A stretch of 64,000 nt of DNA from Salpingoeca rosetta (taxonomy: Eukaryota; Protista; Choanoflagellata): assembly GCA_033442325.1 (NCBI GenBank), contig JAWQFM010000018.1:447482-511481 (forward strand), given 5' to 3'. This document shows positions 45,123 through 61,625 of this stretch, piece after piece. The notes beneath the pieces were generated by a model. It was given only the letters and a program-made list of their open reading frames with translations, did not search any database and was not told where the DNA came from. Numbering within the stretch: the first letter of the stretch is position 1; each line of letters begins with the position of its first letter. A program made the position numbers and the translations under genes.

Positions 45123-46150
45123 GGTGTGTGTGTGGGTGTGTGTGTGGGTGTGTGTGCGTGTGAGTGCGTGTATGTGGCATGCATGGGTCGTGTCTACCGT
45201 TGCTCGCGCCACCTTGCTGACACGCTTACATTCAACACCTTGCTTGTTCCTTGTGGGTTGTTGAACCTCTTCCACAGGGAGGTGGACACCGCCTTGTTGT
45301 CTTGAGAACATCCGCAAAACAGCAAGGTAGATGTGCTGTGTGATGTCACATGTGTTCGTTCGGTACGCGTTGCACCTTTCGTGGCTCTGCGATACTCGTT
45401 CCTGTCCCCAAAATCCTCTCATCCCACCGCCGCCGCCACAATGCAGGTACCTGTTCCGTGTGCTGAATGCCGCGGGTGTGCGGTATTGGCTGGAGGGCGG
45501 TACGCTGCTTGGCGCTGTGCGACACGGCGACATCATTGAGGTGTGCTGACGATAGGCACGTAGATGGTGGCGGTGGGCATATAGATGGTGATGCTGCTGC
45601 ACCTGTGGTGCAAGTGTGAGTGTGGTGTGGATGTGTGATGCAAGTGTGAGTGTGGTGCGGATGTGAGTGTGATAAACACACCATTTGATTGACAAACAAC
45701 AGCAGATCGTGCGTGACCCTCGATTCAACAACGCTTTCTTGCTTGCACATGTGTTGCAGTGGGACTACGACTGCGATGTTGGCATCTTCTTGGATGATGT
45801 GGCCAAAGTGCCCGAGCTCAGCCACGCTGCAACACAGGTGTGGGTGGGGCATGTTGCCTGCAGGCACGAGTTGCACCGTGTGACGCAACGCCATCGCCAT
45901 ACATTCACATACATACTCACCCATGCACGCACATGCATGCCTTTGTGCTGCTGCAGGGTTCACACGAGACCGCGGATGGGTTTGTATGGGAGAAGGCGCG
46001 AGAGGGCGATTTCTTCCGCGTGCAATTCAGCAAGTTCAACCACTTGCACGTGGACATCTTTCCCTTCTACGAAAAGGATGGCGTCATGACAAAGGTCGTG
46101 GCGCAGTTTGCGTGTAAATATGTGTGTGTGAACATGTGTGTGTGTGAACA

Positions 46151-46212
<62 letters not shown>

Positions 46213-46640: not shown

Positions 46641-47355
46641 GCAACAACAGCAACAGCACAACCAGTCCCTGTCCCGCCGCTACCACCACCACGCCCTGCA
46701 ATAACAACTACTCACGTCGGCATCGCTCGAGAAGCGCAGCCCAGCTGCTGGGCCCGACGCCGCGGGGCCGGTCACTGTCGCTCTTCCCTCAGAAGTCGCC
46801 AACAGCAGCAAACGCAGCAAACACAGCAGGTGGAGCGAGAACCTCCACGACAACGATGATGATGATGATGTCGCCGGCCAGTCCGTCGGTAATGGCGCGA
46901 TCACGTGCGGGCGCCAAGAGCACACCGCTGGACCCGGCCCACCCCATGCAGCAGCGCTACGCTGACATGCACGTGCACAGGCTTTGAGAGGCGGGGTTAA
47001 AGAAGCGGAGTGTGTTTGCTGGGCTGACCGTGGTGAACGAACATCTGTGTGTCAGGACGATAGCGGGGTTTGGGTGTGTGTATGCGAACGCTGCCATCGT
47101 CAGACAAGAGAGAGGGACGAATGGTAATGAGGGCAGTGTGTCGCACACACACACACAAGGATAGCTTTGTTCGATTTTTGTTGTATTGCTTTGTATCACA
47201 ATGTCACACATCTTGTTCATGCACAACAACAAGTAAACAAACGCTCAAACCGAAACACGCACGCAGCAAAGACCCACGCAAACATTGCAGTGCAGTGAAG
47301 ATGCAAGACAGCATGACAACACGATGACGCAAGCGGTAGTGAAGATGCATGCGCG

Positions 47356-47973
47356 TCAGTCGAGGAAGTGTGCCGTCTCGAGAAATGCTGCCATGACATC
47401 GGCAGCCTTGCGGGCTGCAACGGGCCGGAACACATTGCGCTGGTCCTTGTGCGTTTCATGGGCGCCTGTTGCTGCTGCTGCTGTTTCTGCATCGGCGCGG
47501 GCACGACCCATCACCGCTGCATTGTGCTTCTTGTTGGCCTTTCTGCGTTTGTCAAAGGCCTGGTTGCCCGTCTTCTTACCCTTCAGCTTACTCGCGTCGC
47601 TCACTGCCTTGATGACGGGAAGCGCCTTGACCTTGGACATGGCATCCCTGGTGTCGCCATCTCCCTGCGCCATCCGCACGGCCTTGAAGAAGGCAAACGC
47701 CTCCATGTCCAGGCCATCCGTCTTTCCCACCAGCGCCGTGCAGTCCTCGCGCACCTGCGGGTACGTGTACAGCACGCCGTCCTTGTGCACCGTCAGCATT
47801 CCCGGCATCTTGAATGAGACGCCCTGGTTGTCTGCGACATCGATGCAGGCATTCTGGTACGACGTGTTATCCTTGGCTGACTGGAAGTAGTAGTCCTTGG
47901 TGCACAAGCGAAACTCCTCCTTGTCGTGCGCAGACTTGTCAATCTTCTCACCACCGCTGCCAGTGGACACCAT
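47356..47973 (-). CDS. Hypothetical intronless ORF (205 aa), possibly the 3' part of a frameshifted gene extending to ~48240
   Basis: Non-repetitive ORF with coding-like GC3 bias. Protein-like segments upstream in two other frames. No recognisable motif. Confidence 0.45.
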   Translation of the reverse strand: MVSTGSGGEKIDKSAHDKEEFRLCTKDYYFQSAKDNTSYQNACIDVADNQGVSFKMPGMLTVHKDGVLYTYPQVREDCTALVGKTDGLDMEAFAFFKAVRMAQGDGDTRDAMSKVKALPVIKAVSDASKLKGKKTGNQAFDKRRKANKKHNAAVMGRARADAETAAAATGAHETHKDQRNVFRPVAARKAADVMAAFLETAHFLD

Positions 47974-48377
47974 TCGCCAAGGGTTTTCTTGACCGCCTTT
48001 TGCAGTGGGCGCAGGTCACTCTTGACGCTGAGCCACGACTCATCATGGGAAGGTGGACAGAACGATTCCAGGGCGTGAAGGAGGTCCGCTCCGTGACTTT
48101 TGCCCCGGATGCCGCATGCTTTTGGTCAGCTTCAACGCCTCCTGCGGTGACAGGTTCCACATCCACAGCTCGTCCGCGATGCTGGCTCTCAGCGCGTCTG
48201 CTTTGCTCTGATCTTCGTCTGTTGGCTTGTTTTGCTTGCAGGCAACTGATGCCGACTGGCGAGTGTGGTCGCGAATTTTCTTTCGTCCGCCAAAACGCAA
48301 CAGCCACTCGAGGAAAAAAGGAAAAGGAAAGGAGACAGAGAAGCAGAGGAAGCAGACACACACACACAAACACACAA

Positions 48378-48418
<41 letters not shown>

Positions 48419-48441
48419 ACACACACACACACACAAGTACG

Positions 48442-51400
48442 ATGGACTCACAAAGTCAAGATGAGCCGCTGGAGGACGACACGTTTCCTGACTGGTTTCA
48501 AAACGTGATCCAGTCCATCGAGGATGGATCCTGCGGAGATACAGTGAAGTGAGTTCTTCTTAGCTTCTTGTGCTGTCTTGCTTGGTGTAACCGCATGTTC
48601 AGATGTTCATGCTCACAATCGCACATGGTGCCTCCCGTTTTGCCCTCTTGCCTTATCTTGGATATGCATTCGGTGGTCTGCACAGCTCACAAGCAAATTT
48701 GTTTGGCTCATCATCGCTGTTTCTCTCTCGTGTCACCTGCGCAACGTGTATGCTGTGCTGGAAGCTTGACTCGTGCGAAACTGTCACAGGAGATGTGCCA
48801 GCGTCTGGCAGCAGCTCTGCTGAAGACTTCATACCCTTTGAAAACCCTGACGTGTGTCGTGTTTGCTGTGTTTGTGTCATGACATGTGTAAGAACAGCGT
48901 CACGTGTGCGGCTATTTGGGTGCTTGTGTACATGTGCAAACGGTTTCTTGTTCGACTGTGCCCATGTGTGATGGCCCTTGATTGACCCCTGTCACGACGT
49001 GGTGCTATTACACTCGTGCCTTGCAGCTTGGCCAGGAACCACATTGGCCCAGAAGACATGAAAGCACTTGCACCAGCACTTGGGAAGCTGCAGAGTCTAC
49101 AGTCACTCAGGTACGTGTCACGTGCCTTGGCACAGATGCGTTGCGTGTGTTTGCTGCTCTTGTGTCATGGCATGTGCACAGCATCACTTGTGCAACGCTT
49201 TGGATGCTTGTGTGCATGTGCACATGATTGCTTGTTTGGCTGTGCTCATGTGTGATGGCTCTTGACTGCTGCTGTCACCTAACATGCGGTTATGGCACTC
49301 ACCCTTTCTAGCTTGAGTGCCAACAACTTCGGCCCTGAAGAGATGAAGGCACTTGCACCATCACTTGGGAAGCTGCAGAGTCTACAGTCACTCAGGTACG
49401 TGTCACGTGCCTTGATACAGATGCGTTGCGTGCGTTTGCTGTATTTGTGTCATGGCATGTGCACAGCATCACTTGTGCAACGCTTTGGATGCTTGTGTGA
49501 ATGTGCACATGATTGCTTATTCGGCTGTGCTCGTGTGTGATGGCCCTTGACTGCTGCTGTCACCTAACATGTGGTTATGGCACTCACCCTTTCTAGGTTG
49601 AGCCGCAACAGAATCGGCCCTGAAGAGATGAAGGTACTTGCACCAGCACTTGGGAAGCTGCAGAGTCTACAGTCACTCAAGTACGTTGCAATTGCCTTGA
49701 TACAGATGTGTTGTGTGTTTGCTGTGTTTGTGTCATGACATGTGAGCGTGGCCCTTGACTGACCCCTGTCGCAACTTGATGCTGTGACTGTCTCTTTTTC
49801 TAGTTTGAGTGGTAACAGAATCGGCCCAGAAGGCATGAAGGCACTTGCACCAGCACTTGGGAAGCTGCAGAGTCTACAGTCACTCAGGTGCGTGTCACGT
49901 GCCTTGGCACAGATGCGTTGCGTGTGTTTGCTGCTCTTGTGTCATGACATGTGCACAGAATCACTTGTGCAACGCTTTGGATGCTTGTGTGAATGTGCAC
50001 ATGATTGCTTATTCGGCTGTGCTCGTGTGTGATGGCTCTTGACTGCTGCTGTCACCTAACATGCGGTTATGGCACTCACCCTTTCTAGCTTGAGTGCCAA
50101 CAACTTCGGCCCTGAAGAGATGAAGGTACTTGCACCAGCACTTGAGAAGCTGCAGAGTCTACAGTCACTGGAGTACGTGTCACGTGCCTTGGCACAGATG
50201 CGTTGCGTGTGTTTGCTGTATTTGTGTCATGGCATGTGCACAGCATCACTTGTGCAACGCTTTGGATGCTTGTGTGCATGTGCACATGATTGCTTGTTTG
50301 GCTGTGCTCATGTGTGATGGCCCTTGACTGCTGTTGTCACCTAACATGCGGTTATGGCACTCATCCTTTCTAGTTTGAGTGACAACCAAATTCGCCCTGA
50401 AGGCATGAGGGCACTTGCACCGGCACTTAAGAACCTGAAGAGCCTACAGTCACTCAGGTACGTGTCACGTGTCTTGGTACAGATGCGTTGTGTGCTTGCT
50501 GTGCTTGTGCTTGTGCTGTGTGCACACCATCACTTGTGCCACGTGTTGGTACTTCTGTGTATGTGCACTGATGATTGCTTGTTCGGTTGTGCTTATGTGT
50601 GATTGATTGCCCTTGACGGATCCTTGTCGCAACTTGCTTCCATGACTGTCACCCTTTCTAGTTTGAGGTACAACCAAATTGGATCAGAAGGCATGAAGGC
50701 ACTTGCACCAGCACTTGAGAACCTGAAGAGCCTACAGTCACTCGAGTATGTTAATATTTACTTGGTGCAGATGCGTTGTGTGTTTGCTGTGCTTGTGCTT
50801 TGACACGTGTGTGTGTGGCATCACCTGTGCAACGTGTTAGTACTTCTGTACATGTGCACTGATGATTGCTTGTTCGGTTGTGCTCATGTGTGATTGATTG
50901 TCCTTGACGGATTCCTGTCGCAACTTGTTTCCATGACTGTCGCCTTTTCTAGTTTGAGTGGCAACAGCATTGGCCCAGAAGGCATGAAGGCACTTGCACC
51001 AGCACTTGGGCAGCTGCAGAGTCTACAGTCACTCAGGTATGTTACTATTGACTTGGTGCAGATGCGTTGTGTGTTTGCTGTGCTTGTGCTTTAACACGTG
51101 CGTTTGTGTGGTATCACCTGTGCAACGCTTTGGATGCTTGTGTACATGTGCAAACGGTTTCTTGTTCGGCTGTGCTCATGTGTGATGGCTCTTGACCGAT
51201 CCCTGTCACTACGTGGTGCTATTACACTCGTGCCTTGCAGCTTGGCTAGGAACCACATTGGCCCAGAAGGCATGAAGGCACTTGCACCAGCACTTGAGCA
51301 GCTGAAGAGTCTGCAGTCACTCAGGTATGTTACAATTGCCTTGGTACAGATGTGTTGCGTGTGTTTGCTGTATTTGTGTCATGACATGTGCGCAGCATCA

Positions 51401-54334
51401 CTTGTGCAACGCTTTGGATGCTTGTGTGAATGTGCACATGATTGCTGATTCGGCTGTGCTCATGTGTGATGGCCCTTGACTGACCCCTGTCGCAACTTGA
51501 TGCTGTGACTGTCACCTTTTTCCTAGTTTGAGTGGCAACGACTTTGGACCAGAAGGCATGAAGGCACTTGCACCATCACTTGGGAAGCTGCAGAATCTAC
51601 AGTCACTCGAGTGAGTGTCTGCGGTGGGGTTGCAAGCAACACGTTTCAGCTCTTCTTGTTGTTGCAGTATCCTTGCTTGTGCTGTGGGCTTCCATGTTGC
51701 CGTGAATTTCGTTCACTTTGCCAATTCTGTGTTTAGCATGCCTCAGATTTTGACAAACATGTGACTGATGCGATTCTCTCTTGCGCGGCAACAACAGCCT
51801 TGACTCCTGCGGCATAACCGTCCTGACCACGGACTTCCTCCACACCGAACACATTCCCAACATCCGCTTCGGCTTCGATCCCATCGCCTACCCACCACCC
51901 TCAATCATCACGTTTGGCCGACCTGCCATCTACGCCTACCTCCGTGATGTTCAACGAGGCCACGAACTGCTGACGCGATCGCGGCTCGTCTTCATTGGTG
52001 ATGGCGGTGTCGGCAAGACCACGCTCAAGACAGCGCTTCTCATGCTCCACAACAAAAGCAAGCATCGAACGAAGTTGCTCAAAAAGGTTCAAGGGGCAGC
52101 AAAGGCAGCGTTCAAACACTACACTGAGGCCGATTTTCGGCACTGGATCGACAAGGACCTTGCGCAACAGGATGGCTTCTTCGACAAGCACTTTCTCGAC
52201 GCACGCGACGTCACGGGCGACGATTTCCTGACGTGTTCGAAGCAGGAGCTGAAGGATACCATCTTCTGCAGTGAGAGCCGAGGGCAGGCAGTGAAGCGTG
52301 TGCAGCGAAAGCTCGCGGATGTGCACCGGTTTCTGCTTGCCGAAGACGTGACGTTGCACTTGAGTCAGAGGCGACCCTTTCAGCTGCTGCTCCAAATCCC
52401 ACACGTGTGGACAGAAGGCGTTCACGTGGATGAGTGGCGCATTTCAAAAACACACCATGAGGACGACCCCACAAGCACGACCAGATTCGACTTGTGGGAT
52501 TTTGCTGGCCAGCTTGAGTTCTTCCCTGCCCACCAGCTCTTCATGGCCTCGCACATGGCCGTGTACATTCTGGTGTTCGATGCCTCCAAGGGTTTCAAGC
52601 ATGCGCATGCTCGCATTCGCGTATGGTTGGACCTGCTCGAGGCATGCCTTCCATACAACGGTGATGGTGCTGCAGATGCCATCCAAGTGCGGCTTGTCGC
52701 CACCAAGACCGATTGTGCGCGTGAGGATTTGGGCCTGCAGCATCTGCTGCAAACACTTCAGCGCCGTGTCGGCAAGCGGTTTGACCTTGGAAGCCGCTGC
52801 TTCGCCACGCGCTACAACGAGCCAGATGGCGGAGATCTGACCGCGCTGGATGCAGAGCTGTGGGCACTGCGCAAGCAAGGGGTGCCGTACTTCCAAGTGC
52901 CCAAGGCGTACATGGCGATCAAGGAGGGCGTGGAAAAGTTGGCGAGACACAAGGAGGTGAAGGGGTGGCCTGTTGTTTCAATCCAAGATTGACGTCAAAG
53001 GCAAGGACCGTGACCTGATTCTTGGCTTCCTCCAAGATGCTGGCGTTGTGCGGCGTATCCCCTCTGACAAGGACGAGTGTGTGGTCAAACCAGTCACGTG
53101 GCTGAGCAAGCTGATGGCTTCCATCTTGCACCCACTTCATGGTCTGAAGATGGCACGTGCTGCGGATGATTCAAGCGACCGTACTTTCCTGCCTGGCGTT
53201 GAGGGTTCCGAAGCTGCCAGTGTGTTGTCATGCCGTGATGTACCCGTTCCAGTTGAGCGTGGGCAAGGTTTGCTTCCATTTCTGGCGTCCTTCGGTGTTT
53301 GCTTTCCTCTGGATGGCCAGCGATACACCTTCCCCGCTCTGTTGCCGCGCGCACGTGTGCATGGGAAGATCGTGGAGCGACTCAACGCTCGTGCCGATGC
53401 TCATGGCGCTGGCATTGCCGGACGTCGTCTGCAGTGCTTGGACGAGCAGCAGTTTCTGCCGCCAACGTGCTGGCCGGCCGTGGTGAAGGGATTATTTTAT
53501 GTTGTGAAAGAGCTGAATGGAGACGCCTTGCACTTGAGCAAGGGCATATTTGTGGCGAAGATGAGCGACAACAGCTACCTCGCCACATGTGTGACGGATG
53601 TCAAGCACAGACGTGCGCTGGACGTCGTCGCGGTGGGCGCTGACTCATTTCTGCTTCATCTGGCCATGCTCGTGGTTGTAGACGCTCTGCACAAACAGTT
53701 TCCATCACTTCGACTCCAGAAGCGCTGCCTACTGGTGGCCGGTGCTGATGATCACGAACGAGAACACCACGTGTTGCTGAAACGTGCTATCACAACGCGG
53801 GCTGTTCACACGGCGGTGAAGTCGACAAGTGAGGCTTTGGAAGGACTTGCTGCTCCCGCAGGAGTAACACCGCAACTGCATCAACTTTACGTTCGACGCT
53901 TGGAGCAGTCGAAGCTGGTATTCAGGGATCGCGACTCTGGCTCATTGAGGCTCGTGTACTTTCATGAGCACTGGCTCGCACTCCTGACAGACCCGGAGCT
54001 TGTGAAAGAGAAGAACATCCCAGAGGCGAGGCAGACAGCGAAGATGTGGCAGCTGTTTGCGGACGTTGAACGCGAGATTTTCTTTTTAAGCGATGCGGAA
54101 ATGAACAACCTTGCCACGCGCTGTGGGATGAAAGACACCCGAAAGTTAGATGGACTAGGCCTCATCCATTGGCTGAAATCAAACTGCCCAAAAGGCAGCA
54201 ACCTGCCGTACCTTTCACCCGACAGCGACCTGGAGCCGCTGCGAGCAGCTGCTGAGGGCGCTCTTGGTGAACGGCACAATATTTGTGTCAACACGCGCGA
54301 ATGGCAGCGATTATTTCAGAAGGAAAACGCCTGA
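48442..54334 (+). CDS. ROCO protein: RI-type LRR array - ROC GTPase (SAM-like insert) - COR - unknown C-terminal domain; +1 frameshift at ~52975-52992
   Basis: Eleven LRR exons; AIYAYLRD; LVFIGDGGVGKTTL; TEGV; LWDFAGQLEF; VYILVFD; LVATKTD; VPKAY..WPVV; FLQDAGVV..WLSKLM; YTFPALL; GRRL. Confidence 0.88.
48765..51610 (+). repeat. Tandem exon-intron array: one 28-aa LRR per 84-nt phase-2 exon, period ~285 bp
   Basis: Exons 48765-48851 (87 nt), 49027-49110, 49312-49395, 49597-49680, 49804-49887, 50089-50172, 50374-50457, 50662-50745, 50953-51036, 51241-51324, 51527-51610. The introns are also homologous. Confidence 0.95.
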
Positions 54335-54986
54335 CCACTGCGTGTGTGACCCTGTTGTTGCTTTGAGTATTGTTCATTTGCATGCTTCACTTCTCCCTCG
54401 TAGCTCTCATTCATTCTGTCCTCCTGCGTTCAATACCATTCACCATTCCTCCCTCCGGCTGCTTCATCTTCATCAATACATCCGTTTGGATCCCTTGACT
54501 ACGACAATAAATCAACACAACCTCAAAGCTTTCCGACCTCCCCAAAGCTCTGAAGTAGCACCACAGCATATCCCCACTCCCAAGTCAATTCTCTTGCTTC
54601 CATATGTTCATCCAGCAACTGCTTCATCTCTGTCGCGTCGGGAAATGAAACGAACTTCCAGTTGCAGTCGTTGGCACTTACACTACAGCGACGTAACAGG
54701 GTGCGCAGCCTCTTGTTGATTGATCTTGCATTCCTGAAAGATGAGATCTGATGCTGCACGTGTGCATGTACAACAGTCGTGTAAATCGTTCAGCTGCTGC
54801 AGCGACGCTGCACACAAGTGAAGTGCCGACCTGATGATGCGGGCTACAACACATCCACTTCCGCCTCGCTAGTGCGTTGACAGAAAATGTGTTTGGCAAT
54901 CAGAATTCACAACACAACACATTGCTGTTTGTCCCATTTATGTTCCTCGTCACGACACCACAATCACACAATCACACGCCACCGTT

Positions 54987-57900
54987 TCACTCACACAACC
55001 TTGTCATGTCGCACCGCATGACCGTGTCATCCCGGGTGCCAAGAAACATGCTGTCTTCAACACACGAGGGCGTGCCAAACACATGGCTGCCAAACTGGCA
55101 CACAGAACGGCTGCAACCACGCTTGCCATCCCTTTGGCCCAGCTCCTCCCTAAACAGCGGCAGCAAGAACAAGTGCCCGTCTGTCGTCACGACGGCAACT
55201 TGGGCCACATCATCATCACCATCATCATCTCCACTGGGATAAACGATCGTGGCGTTGGCGGTGATGCTGTGCTCGCCAACAGCACGCCGCCACAGCACAT
55301 CCCCGTGGCCACTGAGCGCAACGACTGCCCCAGCTTTGGTGCACACGATGATGAGCCACTGGCCGGTGGTGGTCACCGCACTCGCGCGACAATTGCCGTG
55401 TTCGTCTCTGTCTCTTGAGGGCACGGGTGCTGGTGCTGTGGATGTGTCCGGGTCTTCACGGGAAGATGAAGATGAGCGCAGCGGCATAACAACAGCGGCG
55501 AGGGGCGCGGCAAAGACGTCTGCGTCCGCATTGAAGCGCCACAGCAACTGTCCTTGCACAGCATGCATGCACATCACCACCCCGTTCACCAGGCAGATGA
55601 GCACATGCGGCGGGCTGCTTCCCGCTTGTGCCAGCGCAACCGGTGCAGCGAATATGGGGTGGGTGGCCTCGTGTCTCCAAAGCAGATGCTCCAGCATTGT
55701 GCAGGTCCTGCCATCTCCGCCAGCTCCAGGTTTCCCATCGCCCTCGTAGTCATACTGAAAGCACGTCACGTGACCCCGCAGCGATGCTGTGATGCACAGC
55801 GTCATTGTTCCTCGCCTGCTACTGCTGCTGGTACTGGTACTGGTGGTGGTGGTGGTGACAGGAGAAGACCCGTGTCGTGGACTGCTTGCTTGTTTGCGCA
55901 ACATGGCTGCTGCTTCTTCTTCGATGACGGCTGTGTCCATGTGAGTGCGTTCATAATCCCTCTCCCCCTCCTCGCCCGGTGCTTGCAAGCATCTGAGCAA
56001 GCACGGCGGGGCGGCGAGGGGACCACCTTGAGTGGTTGGCGCTGGATGGCGGCATGCAAAGCACGTGCGGCGGTTGGGATCAAGTGCATACAGGCGCCCG
56101 TCATAGCACGCGACGAAGAAGAGGCGGGACCCCAGATCGTAGCGGATGGGCGATCGAACTGCATCAGGGAGCGCCGTGGAAAACCAGCGCTCGCCCGTGA
56201 CGGCGCCATAGACGCGCACCTCCCCAGTGTAGCAGCCCACCGCCACGAACCGCCCGCATGAGGAAATGCACGCCGTGGATTCAATGCGCCCGTCAAAGGT
56301 GTCCTTCCACAGCACGGCACCGGACGCTGCGTCCAGGCACGCGAAGATGCCGGCGTGGCTGCCAATGTACACGCGGCGCTGCGGATGTGCGCCCGTCTCA
56401 TCGTCATCGCACACGTGCAGGGTTGGGCTTGCATCCACACACGCACCCATGTCCTGCGTCCACCGCACATGGCACGAACAAGCAGCTGGCGACGTGGCCG
56501 GGTCAGCGACAATGTCAGCCGCGGTGTGGGTCTGTGTCTGGGTGGGTGTGGGAGGGTGCCTGGCTCTGGTTCTCACCACAGTCACGTTCTCGCAGGCCCA
56601 AACGCCTTGATTTGCTGTGTTGTGGGCGCCCTGGTTGTCATCATCATGTGTGGTGGGTGCAGTGCGAGCGTGCCACACGCGGGATATGACACGTCCAGGC
56701 GGCAGTGACGGTGGGAGCGGTGACAACACCACTGACGCTGCTGGTGTTGTGTCTGCTGGTGTGCTGTCTGTTGGTGCCGTGTGTTTTGATGTGGTATTGT
56801 TGAGTGCAGTCGCACGACCTCGTTGCATCTTGGCTTGCTTGGGTGGTGGTGGTGAATCCAACACCAATGCTGCCTCAGTTCGTTGTTGTTGCTGTTGTTG
56901 GCGCTTGGTGCTGGAGGATGCAGCCACATGGTCAGCACTCCGCGTCACATCCGATCGACTGCCAGCACCGCGGTGGTCAGCAGGCGTCGCCATGGCAAGC
57001 AGTTTGTGGGCGCACGCGTCCAGGGTGTCGTTCATGAGGGAGTGCAGCATGGCCGTGTACACAACACCGGGTACGGCCTCCAGTTGTCTGCACACATCCG
57101 CAGCCGCGAGCGAGTCTCCACCAGCGCTTGCAAACGACACTGCACCCCAGCCGGCCACCAGCGGCGATGGAACGCACACGCCCGCTGCTTCCATCGCACA
57201 CTGCAACACCTCCTTCGCTCGCAATAGCGTCCACGACTGCAATGTGTGTGTATGTGTGAGAGTGTATGTGTGTGTGTGGTGAGTGAGATTATGTGCACGA
57301 CATGATCAGCACCCTTGCTCTATCAAGACACCAAAGCACCCTTGTTTGACTCACATGATGGGCAGCTGCGTGCTTGTGTGTAGCCATGTTCTTCTCCACG
57401 AGCGATGCGTAGTGGCGCTGACACAGCTGGAATCCACAAGCAGCACGCGTGCATGTGAGACTTGCGAGAGATGGCCGTAATCTCTGCAATCGACAGTCCC
57501 ACACGTGAGGTCATCATGGATAAATATGAAGGAGAAACGCGTCATCATTGCACCTTGCCGTGGGAGGTGGTTGTCAGCGTTGGTGTTGTTACAATGGCAT
57601 CAACATCGACACCAAAGGTCTCTCGCAAGCGGCGGTTGAGCGCAGACAGGGCTGTTCATGTGTTCATGTGTGTGTGCGAGCGTGAAGGGGGAGATGGATG
57701 AGAAGCAGCTGGGCGATGAAATGGAAACAACGACGTACGTTAGTTTGGCGCAGATACACACACACACACACCTGCGTCCGTGACAACGTGTTCGTTCGAT
57801 GCCGCTGCTATCGCTGTCGCTGCTGCTGAGTGCGGTGCTTCGGTGCCGGTGGCGCAGACACCAACAAGCCGATGCCTGCAAGCAACGCTGCCTGCAGTCT

Positions 57901-58291
57901 GGTAACGGAGGCAGGCGGCATGGCGCGTGTTGGGCCAGTGCACCTTCAGCCATCGCGCTACCGCGTCCAGCCACACCCGCTTCCCTCGCACTTTCACCTT
58001 GCGTGCAGGAACGTGTTCATGTGCACAGATGCGTGTGCGTGTGTGTGTGTGAGTCATCATGTGCACAGGCGTGTGCGTGTGCGTGTAAGGTCCAGGATTC
58101 AGCGGGAAAGAGTGTACTCACACGATACTTGTCAGAGGAGAACTGATATAAACCGCCGGACCTTCCTTTTGTTTGCTGCGGCGTTACAGTATATGCCCCA
58201 ATATGGCCAGTTACGTCTTTTTGTGCCTGGATCAGTGTATGTGGAACCAAATTGGCTTCGCCCGCTCTTCGCAATACATTCGTATGTTCTA

Positions 58292-58354
<63 letters not shown>

Positions 58355-58969
58355 TCATCATGTGCACAGGCGTGTGCGTGTGCTTGTGCGAGTCATGTGC
58401 ATGGCACAAACAGTCACACGTCACGTCCAGATCTTCAGCCACCAACCGTAACACCCCTCATCCCCACTCCTCGCTGACCATATCATCGCTGCGGCCCAAG
58501 ATTTGGAAGAACGGTCGGGTTGTCCTCGCAGCGGCGAGGAGGCGGCGCAGCAGCTCGGCATCAGCGACACGCGCGCACACGTCGCCCGTCGACCACAACC
58601 TGCAATGCAACCGTACGCACGTGTGTGTGTGCATGTGTGTGTGTGTGAATGTGTGTGAATGTGTGTGAATGTGTGGGTTGGAGAAGGGATGTGCACAGAA
58701 GGTAGCGTGTGGGGTGGCTTGGGGTCGTACATTGCATACTTGACTATGTGTGCAGTGTACCCGTGATGCGTTGATGGTGGTGTGTTGTTGTTGTTGTTGT
58801 TGTTATCACTGACGAGACAGCTGCGGTATTCACCGCCTACAAACAGGACGCCCTTATCGTTCAACTGGAAGCACACACAATCACATGTGGACAACAGATG
58901 TGCTCAAGTCAACTCTGAAAGTGCGTCGCGTGGGGAGAGCACGGATCCATGCGCTTGCAAGGACACAAT

Positions 58970-59054
<85 letters not shown>

Positions 59055-60188
59055 GCACCTGTGTTTTGACGCTGGGGAGAGGAAAGCCGATTGGCAGGGC
59101 CGTGTTGATTGAAATGCACCTCTCAACAACAGGCCTGGTCACAGGGCACAACAACTGCCACACCGCACGCTCTGTACGTGTCGTATGTGTGTGTGTGTTG
59201 AACGTAATGTAAGCCCGTGTTAGAACACGTATCATGTGATGTTCATACACAGGCACAAATACACACAACACACACACACACACACAACACACACACATAT
59301 ATGCGCACACCTGTGATGCCGTAGATGTTCCAGAGGCGGCAGCGGTGCGACCAGTTCCAGGCCGGGAGGAGCGCGGTGGGCGATGGGAACATTTCTCCAC
59401 CAACAAAGAGATGGCGCAGGTGACAGGAAGGAGGCGGAAATGCACTCGTGCCGTCGCCGACAGCTGGCGCTGCTGGTGTGGATTGTGATTGCAACAGCCT
59501 GCACGAAAGAGGGAATGACGGTGATGTGGACCATGTGATCATGTGATCATGTGATCGTGTGGGTGTGACTGTGTGAGGGATGAATTGCACAGTGTGGTGG
59601 ATGTGTGGAAGCTTGGCTAGCTGGTGCCATGTGACATTTGATTTTGCCTGTTGCGATGGCACGTGTCAGTTGTCAGCGAGCACATGCACAGTGCTGTGTC
59701 CAGCATCGATTGGAACTGACTCTGTGAAGACGGTGGTGACCATGCACGCGTATGTGACGCGCAGAGCAGTGAACGCCTCCAGCAGCAAGTCACCGGCCAT
59801 CTGAAGACGTGAAGTGCGGGCGGTGCTGTTCTGCTTTGAGCGCAAGACTGTTGCAAGAACACATATGTTTACACGCACACACACACACACGTACACACAC
59901 ACGTACACACACACACACACACGCACAGACACACACACTCACTCACGTCAGCACAATGTGCAGGGCCGCGCGTCTCGCTGCCGACTCACGGGGATGGAGG
60001 GGTGGAGGAGGACGAGGGAGGCGCCGGTGCGGAGCGCAAGGAAGACGTCCAGCACGTGGGGGTCAAACGTGGGCGGTGACATGACAGCAATGACATCGTC
60101 CGAGCTCAATTCTGGCCATAGCAAGTGTTTGGTGCAGGTGATCGCAATGAAAACACAGTGATGGAGCCAGCACAAGATGTTGTCAGAT

Positions 60189-60219
<31 letters not shown>

Positions 60220-60224
60220 CACAA

Positions 60225-60257
<33 letters not shown>

Positions 60258-61273
60258 TACACATGTGCTCACCAGCGTATTGTTGAATGTCGTTTATGAC
60301 TGTGGCGATGGTGGTGTATGTTCCAGAGACGGTCTTTGGAGCGCCGCTTGTGCCTGATGTGGGCACGCGATATAAATACGGTTCAGGCTGGTGTTGAGTT
60401 GGCTCGGACCGAGCTGGGCGATAGAGGTGCAATATTGCGGTGATGCTGGACATGTGTTGTTGAGGGGGCGAAGACGGCTGTGGCATGTCTGCACCAGCTG
60501 GGTGTACCTCCTCCGCCACCAGCGTCACTGTTCCAAACAAGTCATCTCGATGACTCGGGGCATCGGTCACGTACACGGCCGTGTCGTGCGCTTCATCCTG
60601 CTTTGCTGCGCTGAACGTACACCCAGCTTCGCGACACCTTTTTGGGTGGGTTGGACGACACAAGCCACACGTGAGTGATGCGATGCGGCTGTGGAAGCTG
60701 ATCATGGAAGCCGGTTGTGAAAGTCGGTGATGAATGCTCCTTTTCCTTACACGCACCCGCGAAAGCAGGCAAAACACACGCACAAAGCCACACAAGTGCA
60801 CACACACGCTGTATTGGCTTGGGGAGTTGAACTCACGAAGCGAGGAGAATTGGAGCACACCAGTATGGTGCGGCGTGTGTACACACAACGGACCCAGCCA
60901 CTTGATTCAGAAGTGCAGCGACCTAGAGTACAGTTGGAACATGAGTGTACGTACATTCATGAGGTTGAGGTTGCAGCAAGCACGCACGCAACTTCTTGAC
61001 ACACAAACACGCACACACACACATGCACACACATACACACGCACACACACACATGCACACGCTTGTTCGCACCTCAGCGATGGCTGTGGCGACTGCTGAA
61101 GGTGATATGCAGTAGTACTGCAACATCCTTTCAACCACACTCACGGGTGCACTCACGAATGCACGCATAGGTGCTTCGGGGCTGACATCAGCCGTTGCAT
61201 CCTCAACGTCAACACGACGACCACCCCGCTCCACAACCCACAAGCACGACTCAAGATTGACTGAGCTGGTCAT
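54987..61273 (-). CDS. AASDH: AASDH/ACSF4-like NRPS-type enzyme (adenylation - carrier - PQQ-like beta-propeller); start uncertain
   Basis: PTSGTSGAPK, PTFDPHVLDVFLAL, LFVGGE, WNIYGIT, PIGFP, GVLFVGG. Carrier GGDSL (~57115). WTQDMGACVDASP..VYIGSHAG..GRIESTA..VGCY..VFGTP. Confidence 0.88.
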
Positions 61274-61373
61274 CACGTTCCGCCGTCATGCTGAAATCTG
61301 TATGATAATGTCCACAAATCTTCCACAATCGCACCAAACCAAAACAGCCAACGAAAGAAAGAAAGCAAGTTCG

Positions 61374-61625
61374 ATGGCTGAGCGGGTTGTGGCTGAGGTG
61401 GTGGCAGACGCCCTTGCAAGCAGTGAAGGATCGGTGGCAGCAGCGGACGATGAGGGCGAGGTACCACTGGTCAACATCCACGCAGGAGACGAGCGAGCAA
61501 GGAGGGAGCAGGCTCGCCAGCGGGTGCTGGGCATGCTTGGCGAGGACTTTTTGCCAGTCGCACAGTTTGCACCAACTAAGTCAACCACACATTTCCCTCA
61601 CTCGATGCAACACCGCGAGCCTTGA
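61374..61625 (+). CDS. Small hypothetical protein (83 aa)
   Basis: ATG after an A-rich leader, non-repetitive ORF, divergent from AASDH. No motif recognised. Confidence 0.35.
   Translation: MAERVVAEVVADALASSEGSVAAADDEGEVPLVNIHAGDERARREQARQRVLGMLGEDFLPVAQFAPTKSTTHFPHSMQHREP

What the first reader, a model, noticed from the sequence alone, without database searches (positions are those of the whole stretch)
48765..51610. One-LRR-per-exon cassette array with variation focused on the ligand face: a diversifiable receptor
Seen: ten 84-nt exons, all phase 2-2, so any can be skipped, duplicated or swapped in frame. The helix part is nearly constant (GPExMKALAPALxKLQSLQSL). The residues following the second Leu of LxL vary (ARNH, SANN, SRNR, SGNR, SANN, SDNQ, RYNQ, SGNS, ARNH, SGND). 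The x of LxL is a split codon set by both neighbouring exons (T,S,R,N,S,D,S,D,S,S,D), so new junctions create new residues. Established: these positions form the concave binding surface, and brown-algal ROCO genes have an analogous exon-per-LRR design proposed to be immune-related. Inference: a convergent variable-receptor system in a unicellular holozoan.
Basis: partly seen in the sequence, partly recalled or inferred. Interest (0 to 1): 0.8.

Follow-up and report, generated by a model that had tools for sequence, protein, structure and literature searches.

The report
Choanoflagellate ROCO gene, one-repeat-per-exon array
This is the sensor end of a Salpingoeca rosetta LRR-Roc-COR (ROCO) gene, built from ten recently duplicated 84-base exons that each encode one leucine-rich repeat and differ mainly at the predicted binding face; the design is already known from animal NOD/NLRC genes and brown-algal ROCO genes, and this copy looks partly disabled.

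Summary
Ten 84-nt AG|..|GT exons in phase 2 lie at 49027-51610, and every listed residue is right.

The window is the Salpingoeca rosetta reference scaffold GL832971.1. The gene is PTSG_06810: RI-type LRRs, a Roc GTPase and a COR-like tail.

The array is a 285-bp exon-plus-intron tandem repeat. Variation peaks at LRR positions 5, 7, 8 and 10. Nonsynonymous diversity there is 0.52, against 0.20 in introns. In the youngest units the exons carry 3-5 times more variable sites than the introns. Plain dN/dS stays below 1, and many variants are shared patches, so recombination is involved.

The 84-nt phase-2 exon design is old: a 44%-identical paralog has it without DNA repeats.

There is no usable evidence for cassette skipping. 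The one E1>E5 joint, which the public gene model also uses, is ambiguous. RNA reads are almost absent.

The gene carries a 2-nt frameshift between Roc and COR. Its segmental-duplicate paralog has two LRR exons and no P-loop.

The design matches animal NOD/NLRC genes and, in a 72-nt form, brown-algal ROCOs. This scan has already noted the same design at eight or more other places in this genome.

Verdict: a new member of a known kind. Receptor function is untested.

The parts
48442..48548 (+). Exon 1: start codon and N-terminal capping helix; ends in phase 2
   Evidence: ATG at 48442 and GTGAGT donor after 48548. The spliced joint 48548>48765 is present in the X4 RNA contig. It matches the N-terminus of PTSG_06810.
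48765..48851 (+). Exon 2: 87 nt, a degenerate first LRR (LTRAKLSQEMCQRLAAALLKTSYPLKTL), phase 2-2
   Evidence: The AF2 model places a strand and a helix here. The intron after it (48852-49026) is retained in the X4 contig.
49027..51610 (+). Array of ten 84-nt phase-2 LRR exons (E1-E10) with nine introns of 123-207 nt; 285-bp tandem unit
   Evidence: Exon coordinates are listed in the observation check.
49043..49732 (+). First copy of a three-unit block duplication; the second copy is 49820-50509 (offset 777 nt, 92.2% identical, no gaps)
   Evidence: blastn self-hit. Over the 706 positions compared at this offset (49027-49732), exon divergence is 14.7% against 5.7% for introns, Fisher P=1e-4.
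49820..50509 (+). Second copy of the three-unit block duplication
51798..52992 (+). Last exon, first reading frame: final LRR and C-cap, then the Roc GTPase, ending at TGA 52990-52992
   Evidence: Joint 51610>51798. Pfam Roc PF08477 at 1.1e-13. Best solved relatives are the Roc domains of LRRK2 and of prokaryotic Roco proteins. Motif coordinates come: G1 GDGGVGKT at 51997-52020, DFAGQ at 52498-52512, TKTD at 52702-52713.
52957..52989 (+). Frameshift zone. The window lacks the 2 nt ('GC', after 52980) that the paralog has. The public gene model hides this with a 31-nt 'intron' at 52957-52987
   Evidence: Alignment with L001. The paralogs PTSG_05954 and P0004 read WP..S/N.S.ID in frame through this stretch. 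P0002 lacks these residues.
52988..54334 (+). COR-like region, open for about 450 codons but in the +1 frame relative to Roc
   Evidence: ORF 52973-54334. No Pfam hit for this protein. Weak COR-A hits in the paralogs. Language-model neighbours are COR-A/COR-B clusters at 0.91-0.92. dN/dS against the paralog is 0.39.
48728..51776 (+). Whole LRR module, from late intron 1 to 22 nt before the last exon. It is not alignable by blastn to the segmental-duplicate paralog
   Evidence: The flanks are 90-95% identical to L001, but this segment has no blastn hit. Piecewise identity is 57-83%, introns included.

Best explanation
The region is the sensor domain of PTSG_06810, a Salpingoeca rosetta ROCO protein: RI-type leucine-rich repeats, a Roc GTPase and a COR-like tail.

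Each 28-residue repeat sits on its own 84-nt phase-2 exon, and the exon border falls at the end of the beta-strand. This gene structure is old in the subfamily.

In this gene the array grew recently in the germline. Tandem duplication or unequal crossing-over copied 285-bp exon-plus-intron units, including one three-unit block. The units have since exchanged short patches.

The scaffold codons and the introns stay alike because the units are young and are being homogenised. Codons 5, 7, 8 and 10, on the beta-strand and ascending loop, stay different or change faster than neutral sequence. That is the pattern expected for a recognition surface under diversifying selection.

By inference from other ROCO proteins, the LRR horseshoe would bind a partner and control the Roc/COR GTPase switch.

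Diversification is inherited, not somatic. In the reference strain this copy is probably freshly disabled, or truncated to LRR-Roc (742 aa), by a 2-nt deletion.
For: Shown:
- Identity and architecture: the window is 100% identical to GL832971.1, and the gene is PTSG_06810. Pfam finds LRR_6 at 2e-44 and Roc at 1e-12. The Roc domain is closest to those of LRRK2 and prokaryotic Roco proteins.
- RI-type fold: sequence and Foldseek hits are to RI, NOD2 and NLRP3. The model has pLDDT above 90 over residues 20-230, and each strand ends at the split-codon residue.
- Old exon design: PTSG_05954 (44% identical) has at least seven 84-nt phase-2 LRR exons but no DNA tandem repeat.
- Recent amplification: period-285 repeat. 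Introns U2, U3, U5 and U6 are 94-97% identical. There is a 777-nt offset block duplication without gaps.
- Excess change in exons: 14.7% against 5.7% in the block. In the young units, variable sites are 17/201 in introns, 7/16 in the variable patch and 17/68 in the rest of the exon. Nonsynonymous diversity at codons 7, 8 and 10 is 0.515 against 0.197 in introns, P=5.5e-4.
- Homogenisation: ten scaffold codons are identical even at synonymous sites in all ten exons.
- Patch exchange: 76 of 171 site pairs fail the four-gamete test, and 24 of 33 young-lineage variant states recur in other units.
- Module-level turnover: the segmental-duplicate paralog has only two LRR exons and a non-alignable LRR module.

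Inferred: ligand binding, and control of the GTPase switch.
Against: - Nei-Gojobori dN/dS is 0.72 overall and 0.74 at codons 5, 7, 8 and 10 when local dS is used. The excess appears only against intron divergence or rest-of-exon synonymous divergence.
- The variable codons were partly chosen after seeing the data.
- As a 16-nt window, the variable patch is not an outlier among intron windows: 12% of them are as diverse.
- Positions 2 and 3 of the concave strand are invariant.
- The neighbour-incompatibility (PHI-like) test for recombination is not significant.
- The gene has a frameshift before COR. It has almost no raw RNA reads, 2 and 5 in about 1.6 Gb each, and one retained intron. Amino-acid changes on its branch are not fewer than on the clearly broken paralog, 14 against 21. 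It may therefore be decaying rather than selected.
- No ligand, no phenotype and no population data are available.
Confidence: 0.6

Rival explanations
1. This is an ordinary, decaying duplicate. The array is a recent tandem expansion in a gene that is losing function. The variable positions are simply the least constrained surface residues, drifting neutrally. The scaffold residues look constant because the units are young and are homogenised by gene conversion. No diversifying selection and no receptor role are needed.
For: - dN/dS is below 1 in every partition.
- A 2-nt frameshift separates Roc from COR.
- Raw RNA reads are nearly absent, and intron 48852-49026 is retained in the only contig over it.
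- Branch-specific amino-acid changes are similar to those of the clearly broken paralog.
- The paralog has lost the P-loop and most LRR exons.
Against: - Neutral drift cannot make exon sites diverge faster than the adjacent introns. Yet exons are 2.6 times more diverged in the colinear block and have 3-5 times more variable sites in the youngest units.
- The COR frame is still open for about 450 codons, with dN/dS 0.39 against the paralog. Any loss of function is therefore very recent.
Confidence: 0.25
2. The array is a combinatorial splicing device. The symmetric cassettes are skipped or chosen in a regulated or stochastic way, so that one gene yields many receptor isoforms, as proposed for brown-algal ROCOs and shown for exon 5 of NLRP3.
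For: - All cassettes are 84 nt and in phase 2, so any subset stays in frame.
- The public model PTSG_06810 joins E1 to E5 and leaves out E2-E4.
- An RNA contig of run X4 shows a joint 49110>50089.
Against: - E1 and E4 share their last 47 nt, and E2 and E5 share their first 38 nt. A k-mer assembly or a short side of 43 nt therefore cannot tell E1>E5 from the normal E4>E5.
- The joint contig's depth, 40.4, is twice that of its neighbours, as expected for shared words.
- The other four LRR joints seen are all constitutive neighbours.
- Raw reads are too few to test the idea.
Confidence: 0.08
3. The array is an assembly artefact: the repeat number or order is a product of mis-assembly of near-identical units.
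For: The units are 80-97% alike, and the reference assembly dates from 2011. Some X1 contigs leave the array at 50517 and 51425, and one back-joint (51442>50501) exists at depth 9.
Against: Independent 2022 contigs (X1) lie on array segments 48685-48950, 50301-50590 and 51558-51805 with no differences. The units differ enough, at 3-30%, to be told apart. The exon order gives an uninterrupted reading frame.
Confidence: 0.04

Closest known systems
Animal NOD/NLRC genes (NOD1, NOD2, NLRC-type), LRR exon design
   Same: RI-type LRRs with one 28-residue repeat per 84-bp frame-preserving exon, and the exon border inside the beta-strand (PMC6642158). Here the exons are 84 nt, the strand ends at the split codon, and the model superposes on rabbit NOD2, RI and NLRP3. 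In both, the LRRs sit next to a P-loop NTPase switch.
   Different: The switch here is a Roc GTPase with a COR-like tail, not a NACHT ATPase, and the LRRs are N-terminal rather than C-terminal. Bona fide NLRs are reported absent from choanoflagellates (PMC3879445, PMC6040629). I did not compare the intron phase of the animal exons.
Brown-algal ROCO genes with shuffled LRR exons (Ectocarpus, Saccharina)
   Same: LRR-Roc-COR architecture, one LRR per phase-2 exon, tandem exon duplication and shuffling, and variation at the concave face. They are proposed immune receptors (PMC3341825, PMC11378527).
   Different: The algal exons are 72 nt, encoding LRRs of 23-24 residues of a different class. They have intronic and reverse-strand inactivated LRR exons and documented splice variants. 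Here the exons are 84 nt and RI-type, no extra or reverse LRR copies were found, and no splice variant is demonstrated.
Minimal ROCO proteins (Chlorobium tepidum Roco, MFHAS1/MASL1)
   Same: The domain order is LRR, Roc, COR, with no kinase. The Roc domain's best solved relatives include the prokaryotic Roco structures 3dpu/6hlu and 4wnr.
   Different: About 165 residues separate the P-loop from switch II. The COR part is too diverged for Pfam. COR is out of frame in this copy.
Other one-LRR-per-exon ROCO arrays noted by this scan in the same genome
   Same: 84-nt phase-2 cassettes, co-duplicated introns, and variation at the binding strand (notes s1-435316, s1-434355, s1-431410, s1-434365 and others).
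   Different: Those notes describe ROCO-TIR and ROCO-PARP genes, mostly near chromosome ends. This gene has no effector domain, lies about 0.5 Mb into a 1.37-Mb scaffold, and belongs to a small subfamily (PTSG_06810, 06832, 05954 and one kinase-annotated member). I did not compare sequences with those arrays.

Membership tests
ROCO proteins | Roc (Ras of complex) GTPase domain with G1, G3 and G4 motifs | tested here: met
   Pfam PF08477 at 1.1e-13. GDGGVGKT, DFAGQ and TKTD are present. The closest solved sequences are Roc domains of LRRK2 and prokaryotic Roco proteins.
ROCO proteins | COR domain directly C-terminal to Roc, in the same polypeptide | tested here: inconclusive
   No Pfam COR hit for this protein. 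Hits to COR-A in the paralogs are weak, E 0.023 and 0.1. Language-model neighbours are COR-A/COR-B clusters at 0.91-0.92. The PDB profile search found nothing. The AF2 model has pLDDT 46 and is unusable. In this copy the region is in the +1 frame after a 2-nt deletion.
RI-like (ribonuclease-inhibitor-type) LRR class | 28-29-residue repeats LxxLxLxxNxIGxxGxxxLxxaLxxxxx forming a strand-helix horseshoe | tested here: met
   28-residue period. Pfam LRR_6 at 1.9e-44. RI, NOD2, NLRP and RanGAP are the top solved sequences and folds. The model shows alternating 3-residue strands and 13-residue helices.
NOD/NLRC-type modular LRR exon design | One 28-aa LRR per 84-bp frame-preserving exon, with the border inside the beta-strand | tested here: met
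   the definition is from PMC6642158.
NLR (NACHT-LRR) receptors | NACHT/NB-ARC STAND ATPase between effector domain and LRRs | tested here: not met
   A Pfam scan of the whole protein finds only LRR families and Roc/Ras, and no NACHT.
Brown-algal exon-shuffled ROCO LRR arrays | 72-nt type I LRR exons (24 aa), phase 2 | tested here: not met
   The phase is the same, but the exons are 84 nt and the LRR class is RI-like (against PMC3341825 and PMC11378527).
Brown-algal exon-shuffled ROCO LRR arrays | Inactivated or reverse-strand LRR exons within introns | tested here: not met
   The degenerate exon pattern, searched on both strands with 3 mismatches, finds only the ten coding exons in the 64-kb window.
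Brown-algal exon-shuffled ROCO LRR arrays | Positive selection at concave-face residues | tested here: inconclusive
   Nonsynonymous diversity at codons 7, 8 and 10 exceeds intron diversity, and exons diverge faster than introns. But dN/dS is below 1, and no site model could be run.
Brown-algal exon-shuffled ROCO LRR arrays | Alternative splicing of LRR exons | tested here: inconclusive
   The only candidate is the ambiguous E1>E5 joint, and raw RNA reads are too few.

The most novel reading that the evidence does not exclude
The E1>E5 form, seen both in the public gene model and in an RNA contig, is real. S. rosetta then uses in-frame skipping of 84-nt cassettes to make several receptor isoforms from one ROCO gene. 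[quoted passage not shown] It would also suggest that this module predates animals.
Probability: 0.1. Interest if true: 0.8.

Novelty: new member of a known kind. Interest (0 to 1): 0.42.

Why it matters
Choanoflagellates are the sister group of animals and are reported to lack true NLRs (PMC3879445, PMC6040629). Here a GTPase-switch protein carries RI-type repeats in exactly the exon format of animal NOD/NLRC genes, and those repeats show the marks of fast germline turnover.

If the family acts in recognition, two things would follow. Cytosolic LRR sensors with modular exons would be older than animals, or would have arisen repeatedly on different switches. S. rosetta, which can be transformed and edited, would also become a test bed for how such arrays evolve.

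For this locus the practical points are more modest:
- The public gene model omits three real exons and hides a frameshift.
- The pair PTSG_06810/PTSG_06832 is a natural example of replacement of a whole LRR module after a segmental duplication.

Tried and rejected
- **L001 as an orthologue from another strain.** I first read L001 (PTSG_06832, about 93% identical) that way. I rejected this when L002 proved 100% identical to the window and lay on the same scaffold. The 'other letters' of run X1 come from contigs of that paralog.
- **The 31-nt GT..AG at 52957-52987 as a real intron.** Rejected. The paralogs read through the stretch in frame with conserved residues, and the closest paralog has 2 extra bases there.
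- **The E1>E5 joint as proof of exon skipping.** Rejected as ambiguous.
- **Raw RNA reads (X16, X17).** Only 2 and 5 reads, so no splicing or strand information.
- **COR region.** AF2 with a four-sequence alignment gave pLDDT 46, so I ran no fold search on it. The PDB profile search found nothing relevant.
- **PHI-like neighbour-incompatibility test.** Not significant on 19 sites.
- **Findings search by sequence.** Blank.
- **Loose-end sequences of X1 contigs.** They are not in the window and their origin is unknown.
- **Large representative protein search and collection scans.** Not run. The family was already named, the operators flagged the cost, and the collections hold no choanoflagellate genomes.
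- **Mapping to ribonuclease-inhibitor contact residues.** Not done, because no stored copy of that sequence was available and I did not type one from memory.

Full report
**What is there**

The stretch 48765-51610 holds an 87-nt exon followed by ten exons of exactly 84 nt. Each is bounded by AG and GT. Each begins with the third base of a codon and ends with the first two bases of the next.

The array is a 285-bp exon-plus-intron tandem repeat (Tandem Repeats Finder scores 1184 and 1934). A degenerate 29-nt exon pattern hits ten times against none expected. Contigs of run X4 carry five of the predicted splice joints, among them exon 1>exon 2, E7>E8>E9>E10 and E10>last exon. The exon model therefore does not rest on sequence reading alone.

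**Which gene**

Locus L002, from the Salpingoeca rosetta reference assembly (GCA_000188695.1, scaffold GL832971.1), is 100% identical to window 38442-64000. The gene is PTSG_06810 (P0002).

The gene starts at ATG 48442. After the array, a large last exon begins at 51798. It encodes a Roc GTPase (Pfam PF08477 at 1e-13). The motifs GDGGVGKT, DFAGQ and TKTD are present. The nearest solved sequences are the Roc domains of LRRK2 and of prokaryotic Roco proteins.

The tail that follows has no Pfam hit. Three things still point to COR. It sits where COR should be. The paralogs give weak COR-A hits. Its language-model neighbours are COR-A/COR-B clusters. I call this a ROCO gene with the COR criterion only provisionally met.

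**The repeats**

The repeats are RI-type:
- The period is 28 residues.
- Pfam LRR_6 scores 2e-44.
- The top solved sequences and folds are ribonuclease inhibitor, rabbit NOD2, NLRPs and RanGAP.

A single-sequence AlphaFold model has pLDDT above 90 over residues 20-230. It alternates three-residue strands with 13-residue helices. Each strand ends exactly at the residue encoded by the split codon (residues 65, 93, 121 and so on). The exon border therefore lies inside the beta-strand.

**History**

A paralog only 44% identical in Roc-COR, PTSG_05954, also encodes its diverged LRRs on at least seven 84-nt phase-2 exons. Those exons are not part of any DNA tandem repeat. The cassette format is therefore old. 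What is new in PTSG_06810 is the amplification.

- Introns U2, U3, U5 and U6 are 94-97% identical.
- A three-unit block (49043-49732) is repeated 777 nt downstream, without a single gap.

A segmental duplication of at least 15 kb lies about 80 kb away in inverted orientation. It carries the sister gene PTSG_06832 (L001; flanks 90-95% identical). That copy has:
- only two LRR exons, one of 90 nt with a GC donor;
- a 207-nt deletion that removes the P-loop;
- a 1-nt deletion;
- a Ty3 element upstream.

Between late intron 1 (48728) and 22 nt before the last exon (51776) the two copies no longer align by blastn. Piecewise identity there is 57-83%, introns included. One copy has therefore replaced its whole LRR module, with breakpoints in the two flanking introns.

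**Is variation focused on the binding face?**

I number the repeat L1 x x L4 x5 L6 x7 x8 N9 x10. Codons 5, 7, 8 and 10 show pN 0.51, against 0.086 in the other 24 codons. Positions 2 and 3, which also belong to the concave strand, are invariant (Q, S).

Ten scaffold codons are identical in all ten exons even at synonymous sites. The constancy therefore reflects youth and homogenisation as well as protein constraint.

Classical dN/dS is 0.72 overall and 0.74 at the four codons, because their few synonymous sites are also saturated. Measured against neutral sequence next door, the picture changes:
- Nonsynonymous positions of codons 7, 8 and 10 have diversity 0.515, against 0.197 in introns (P=5.5e-4).
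- The gap-free block duplication has 14.7% exon divergence against 5.7% intron divergence (P=1e-4).
- In the youngest units, variable sites are 17/201 in introns, 7/16 in the variable patch and 17/68 in the rest of the exon.

Drift alone cannot make exons change faster than their introns.

Much of the variation is reshuffled rather than new. Of 171 pairs of informative sites, 76 fail the four-gamete test. Of 33 variant states in the young units, 24 recur in other units. Neighbouring exons also share short patches: E3/E4 share AACAGAATC, and E6/E7 share AACCAAATT.

My reading is germline diversification by unequal crossing-over and patchy conversion, with selection keeping the face codons different. 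The selection step is the weaker link.

**The split codon**

This claim is true but weak. Ten of the eleven downstream first bases are C or T, which are synonymous in AGY, AAY, GAY and ACY. The residue is therefore set by the upstream exon. Only the exon at 49597, which starts with G, would change it.

**Isoforms and expression**

The public protein joins E1 to E5 and omits E2-E4. An X4 contig shows the same joint. This is not decisive, for two reasons:
- E1 and E4 are identical over their last 47 nt, and E2 and E5 over their first 38 nt.
- The contig's shorter side is 43 nt, and its depth is double that of its neighbours.

Two raw RNA runs gave 2 and 5 reads from about 1.6 Gb each. The only RNA contig over exon 2 keeps the next intron (48852-49026), which would stop translation after 76 residues.

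**A lesion in this copy**

The Roc frame ends at TGA 52990-52992. The COR-like frame continues in +1. The closest paralog has two extra bases (GC) after 52980 that would keep the frame. The more distant paralogs read WP..S/N.S.ID through this stretch.

The public model removes 31 nt as an 'intron'. I regard that as an annotation repair. Independent contigs from 2022 show no difference at this place.

With all ten cassettes, the open frame gives a 742-residue LRR-Roc protein. The COR frame is still open for about 450 codons, and dN/dS against the paralog is 0.39. The lesion is therefore recent. Changes on this gene's branch are not fewer than on the broken paralog's branch (14 against 21, not significant).

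**Comparison with what is known**

Hoss et al. (PMC6642158) describe most NOD and NLRC genes as having one 28-residue RI-type LRR per exon, frame-preserving, with the border at a fixed place in the beta-sheet. That is the same format as here.

Brown-algal ROCO genes have 72-nt phase-2 exons of another LRR class, with inactivated intronic copies, splice variants and positive selection (PMC3341825, PMC11378527).

NLRs proper are reported absent from choanoflagellates (PMC3879445, PMC6040629). I found no paper in the held library on ROCO genes of S. rosetta.

This scan has already noted the same design at eight or more other places in this genome, and follow-up agents reached similar readings. 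Those are leads that I did not re-test. They mean this locus adds a member, not a new kind.

**Verdict**

This is a real ROCO sensor array in cassette format, with binding-face variation that exceeds neutral divergence. Its diversification is inherited. There is no evidence for cassette choice within an individual. This copy is probably freshly disabled. Function is untested.

Noticed in passing
window 46713-61561, against L001 (GL832971.1 574637-597545, reversed): An inverted segmental duplication of at least 15 kb, 90-95% identical, on the same scaffold. It carries the ROCO gene and the neighbouring AMP-binding/beta-propeller (ACSF4-like) gene. The other copy has a Ty3-type retrotransposon inserted at the point that corresponds to window 47978.
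   Followed up: partly
window 52957-52989: The public gene model PTSG_06810 uses a 31-nt 'intron' to step over a 2-nt deletion, and it omits LRR exons E2-E4. Both look like annotation artefacts.
   Followed up: yes
window 51921-52128: This 207-nt stretch holds the Roc P-loop. It is deleted in the paralog PTSG_06832, whose frame is also shifted there.
   Followed up: partly
window 52021-52497: About 165 residues lie between the P-loop (51997-52020) and switch II (52498-52512). The Pfam Roc match starts only at profile position 31, so the G domain carries a large insertion. Another note of this scan, s1-436609, calls it SAM-like.
   Followed up: no
window 48852-49026: The intron after exon 2 is kept in the only RNA contig that covers it (X4, depth equal to the exon), while intron 1 is spliced out in that same contig. 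Retention would end translation after 76 residues.
   Followed up: no
window 50501-50518 and 51425-51442: Contigs of run X1 leave the array at these intron points into sequence that is not in the window. One back-joint, 51442>50501, carries 35 foreign letters and has depth 9. These could be copies of intron pieces elsewhere in the genome, or a minor rearranged form.
   Followed up: partly
window 52129-54331: Synonymous divergence from the paralog is 0.05 in Roc but 0.17 in the COR-like part. This hints at a more recent gene conversion between the two copies over Roc.
   Followed up: no
window 48356-48435 and 46121-46212: Long (AC)n and (TG)n microsatellites. One ends 7 nt before the start codon of the ROCO gene, and it is also present, in variant form, in the paralog.
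   Followed up: no
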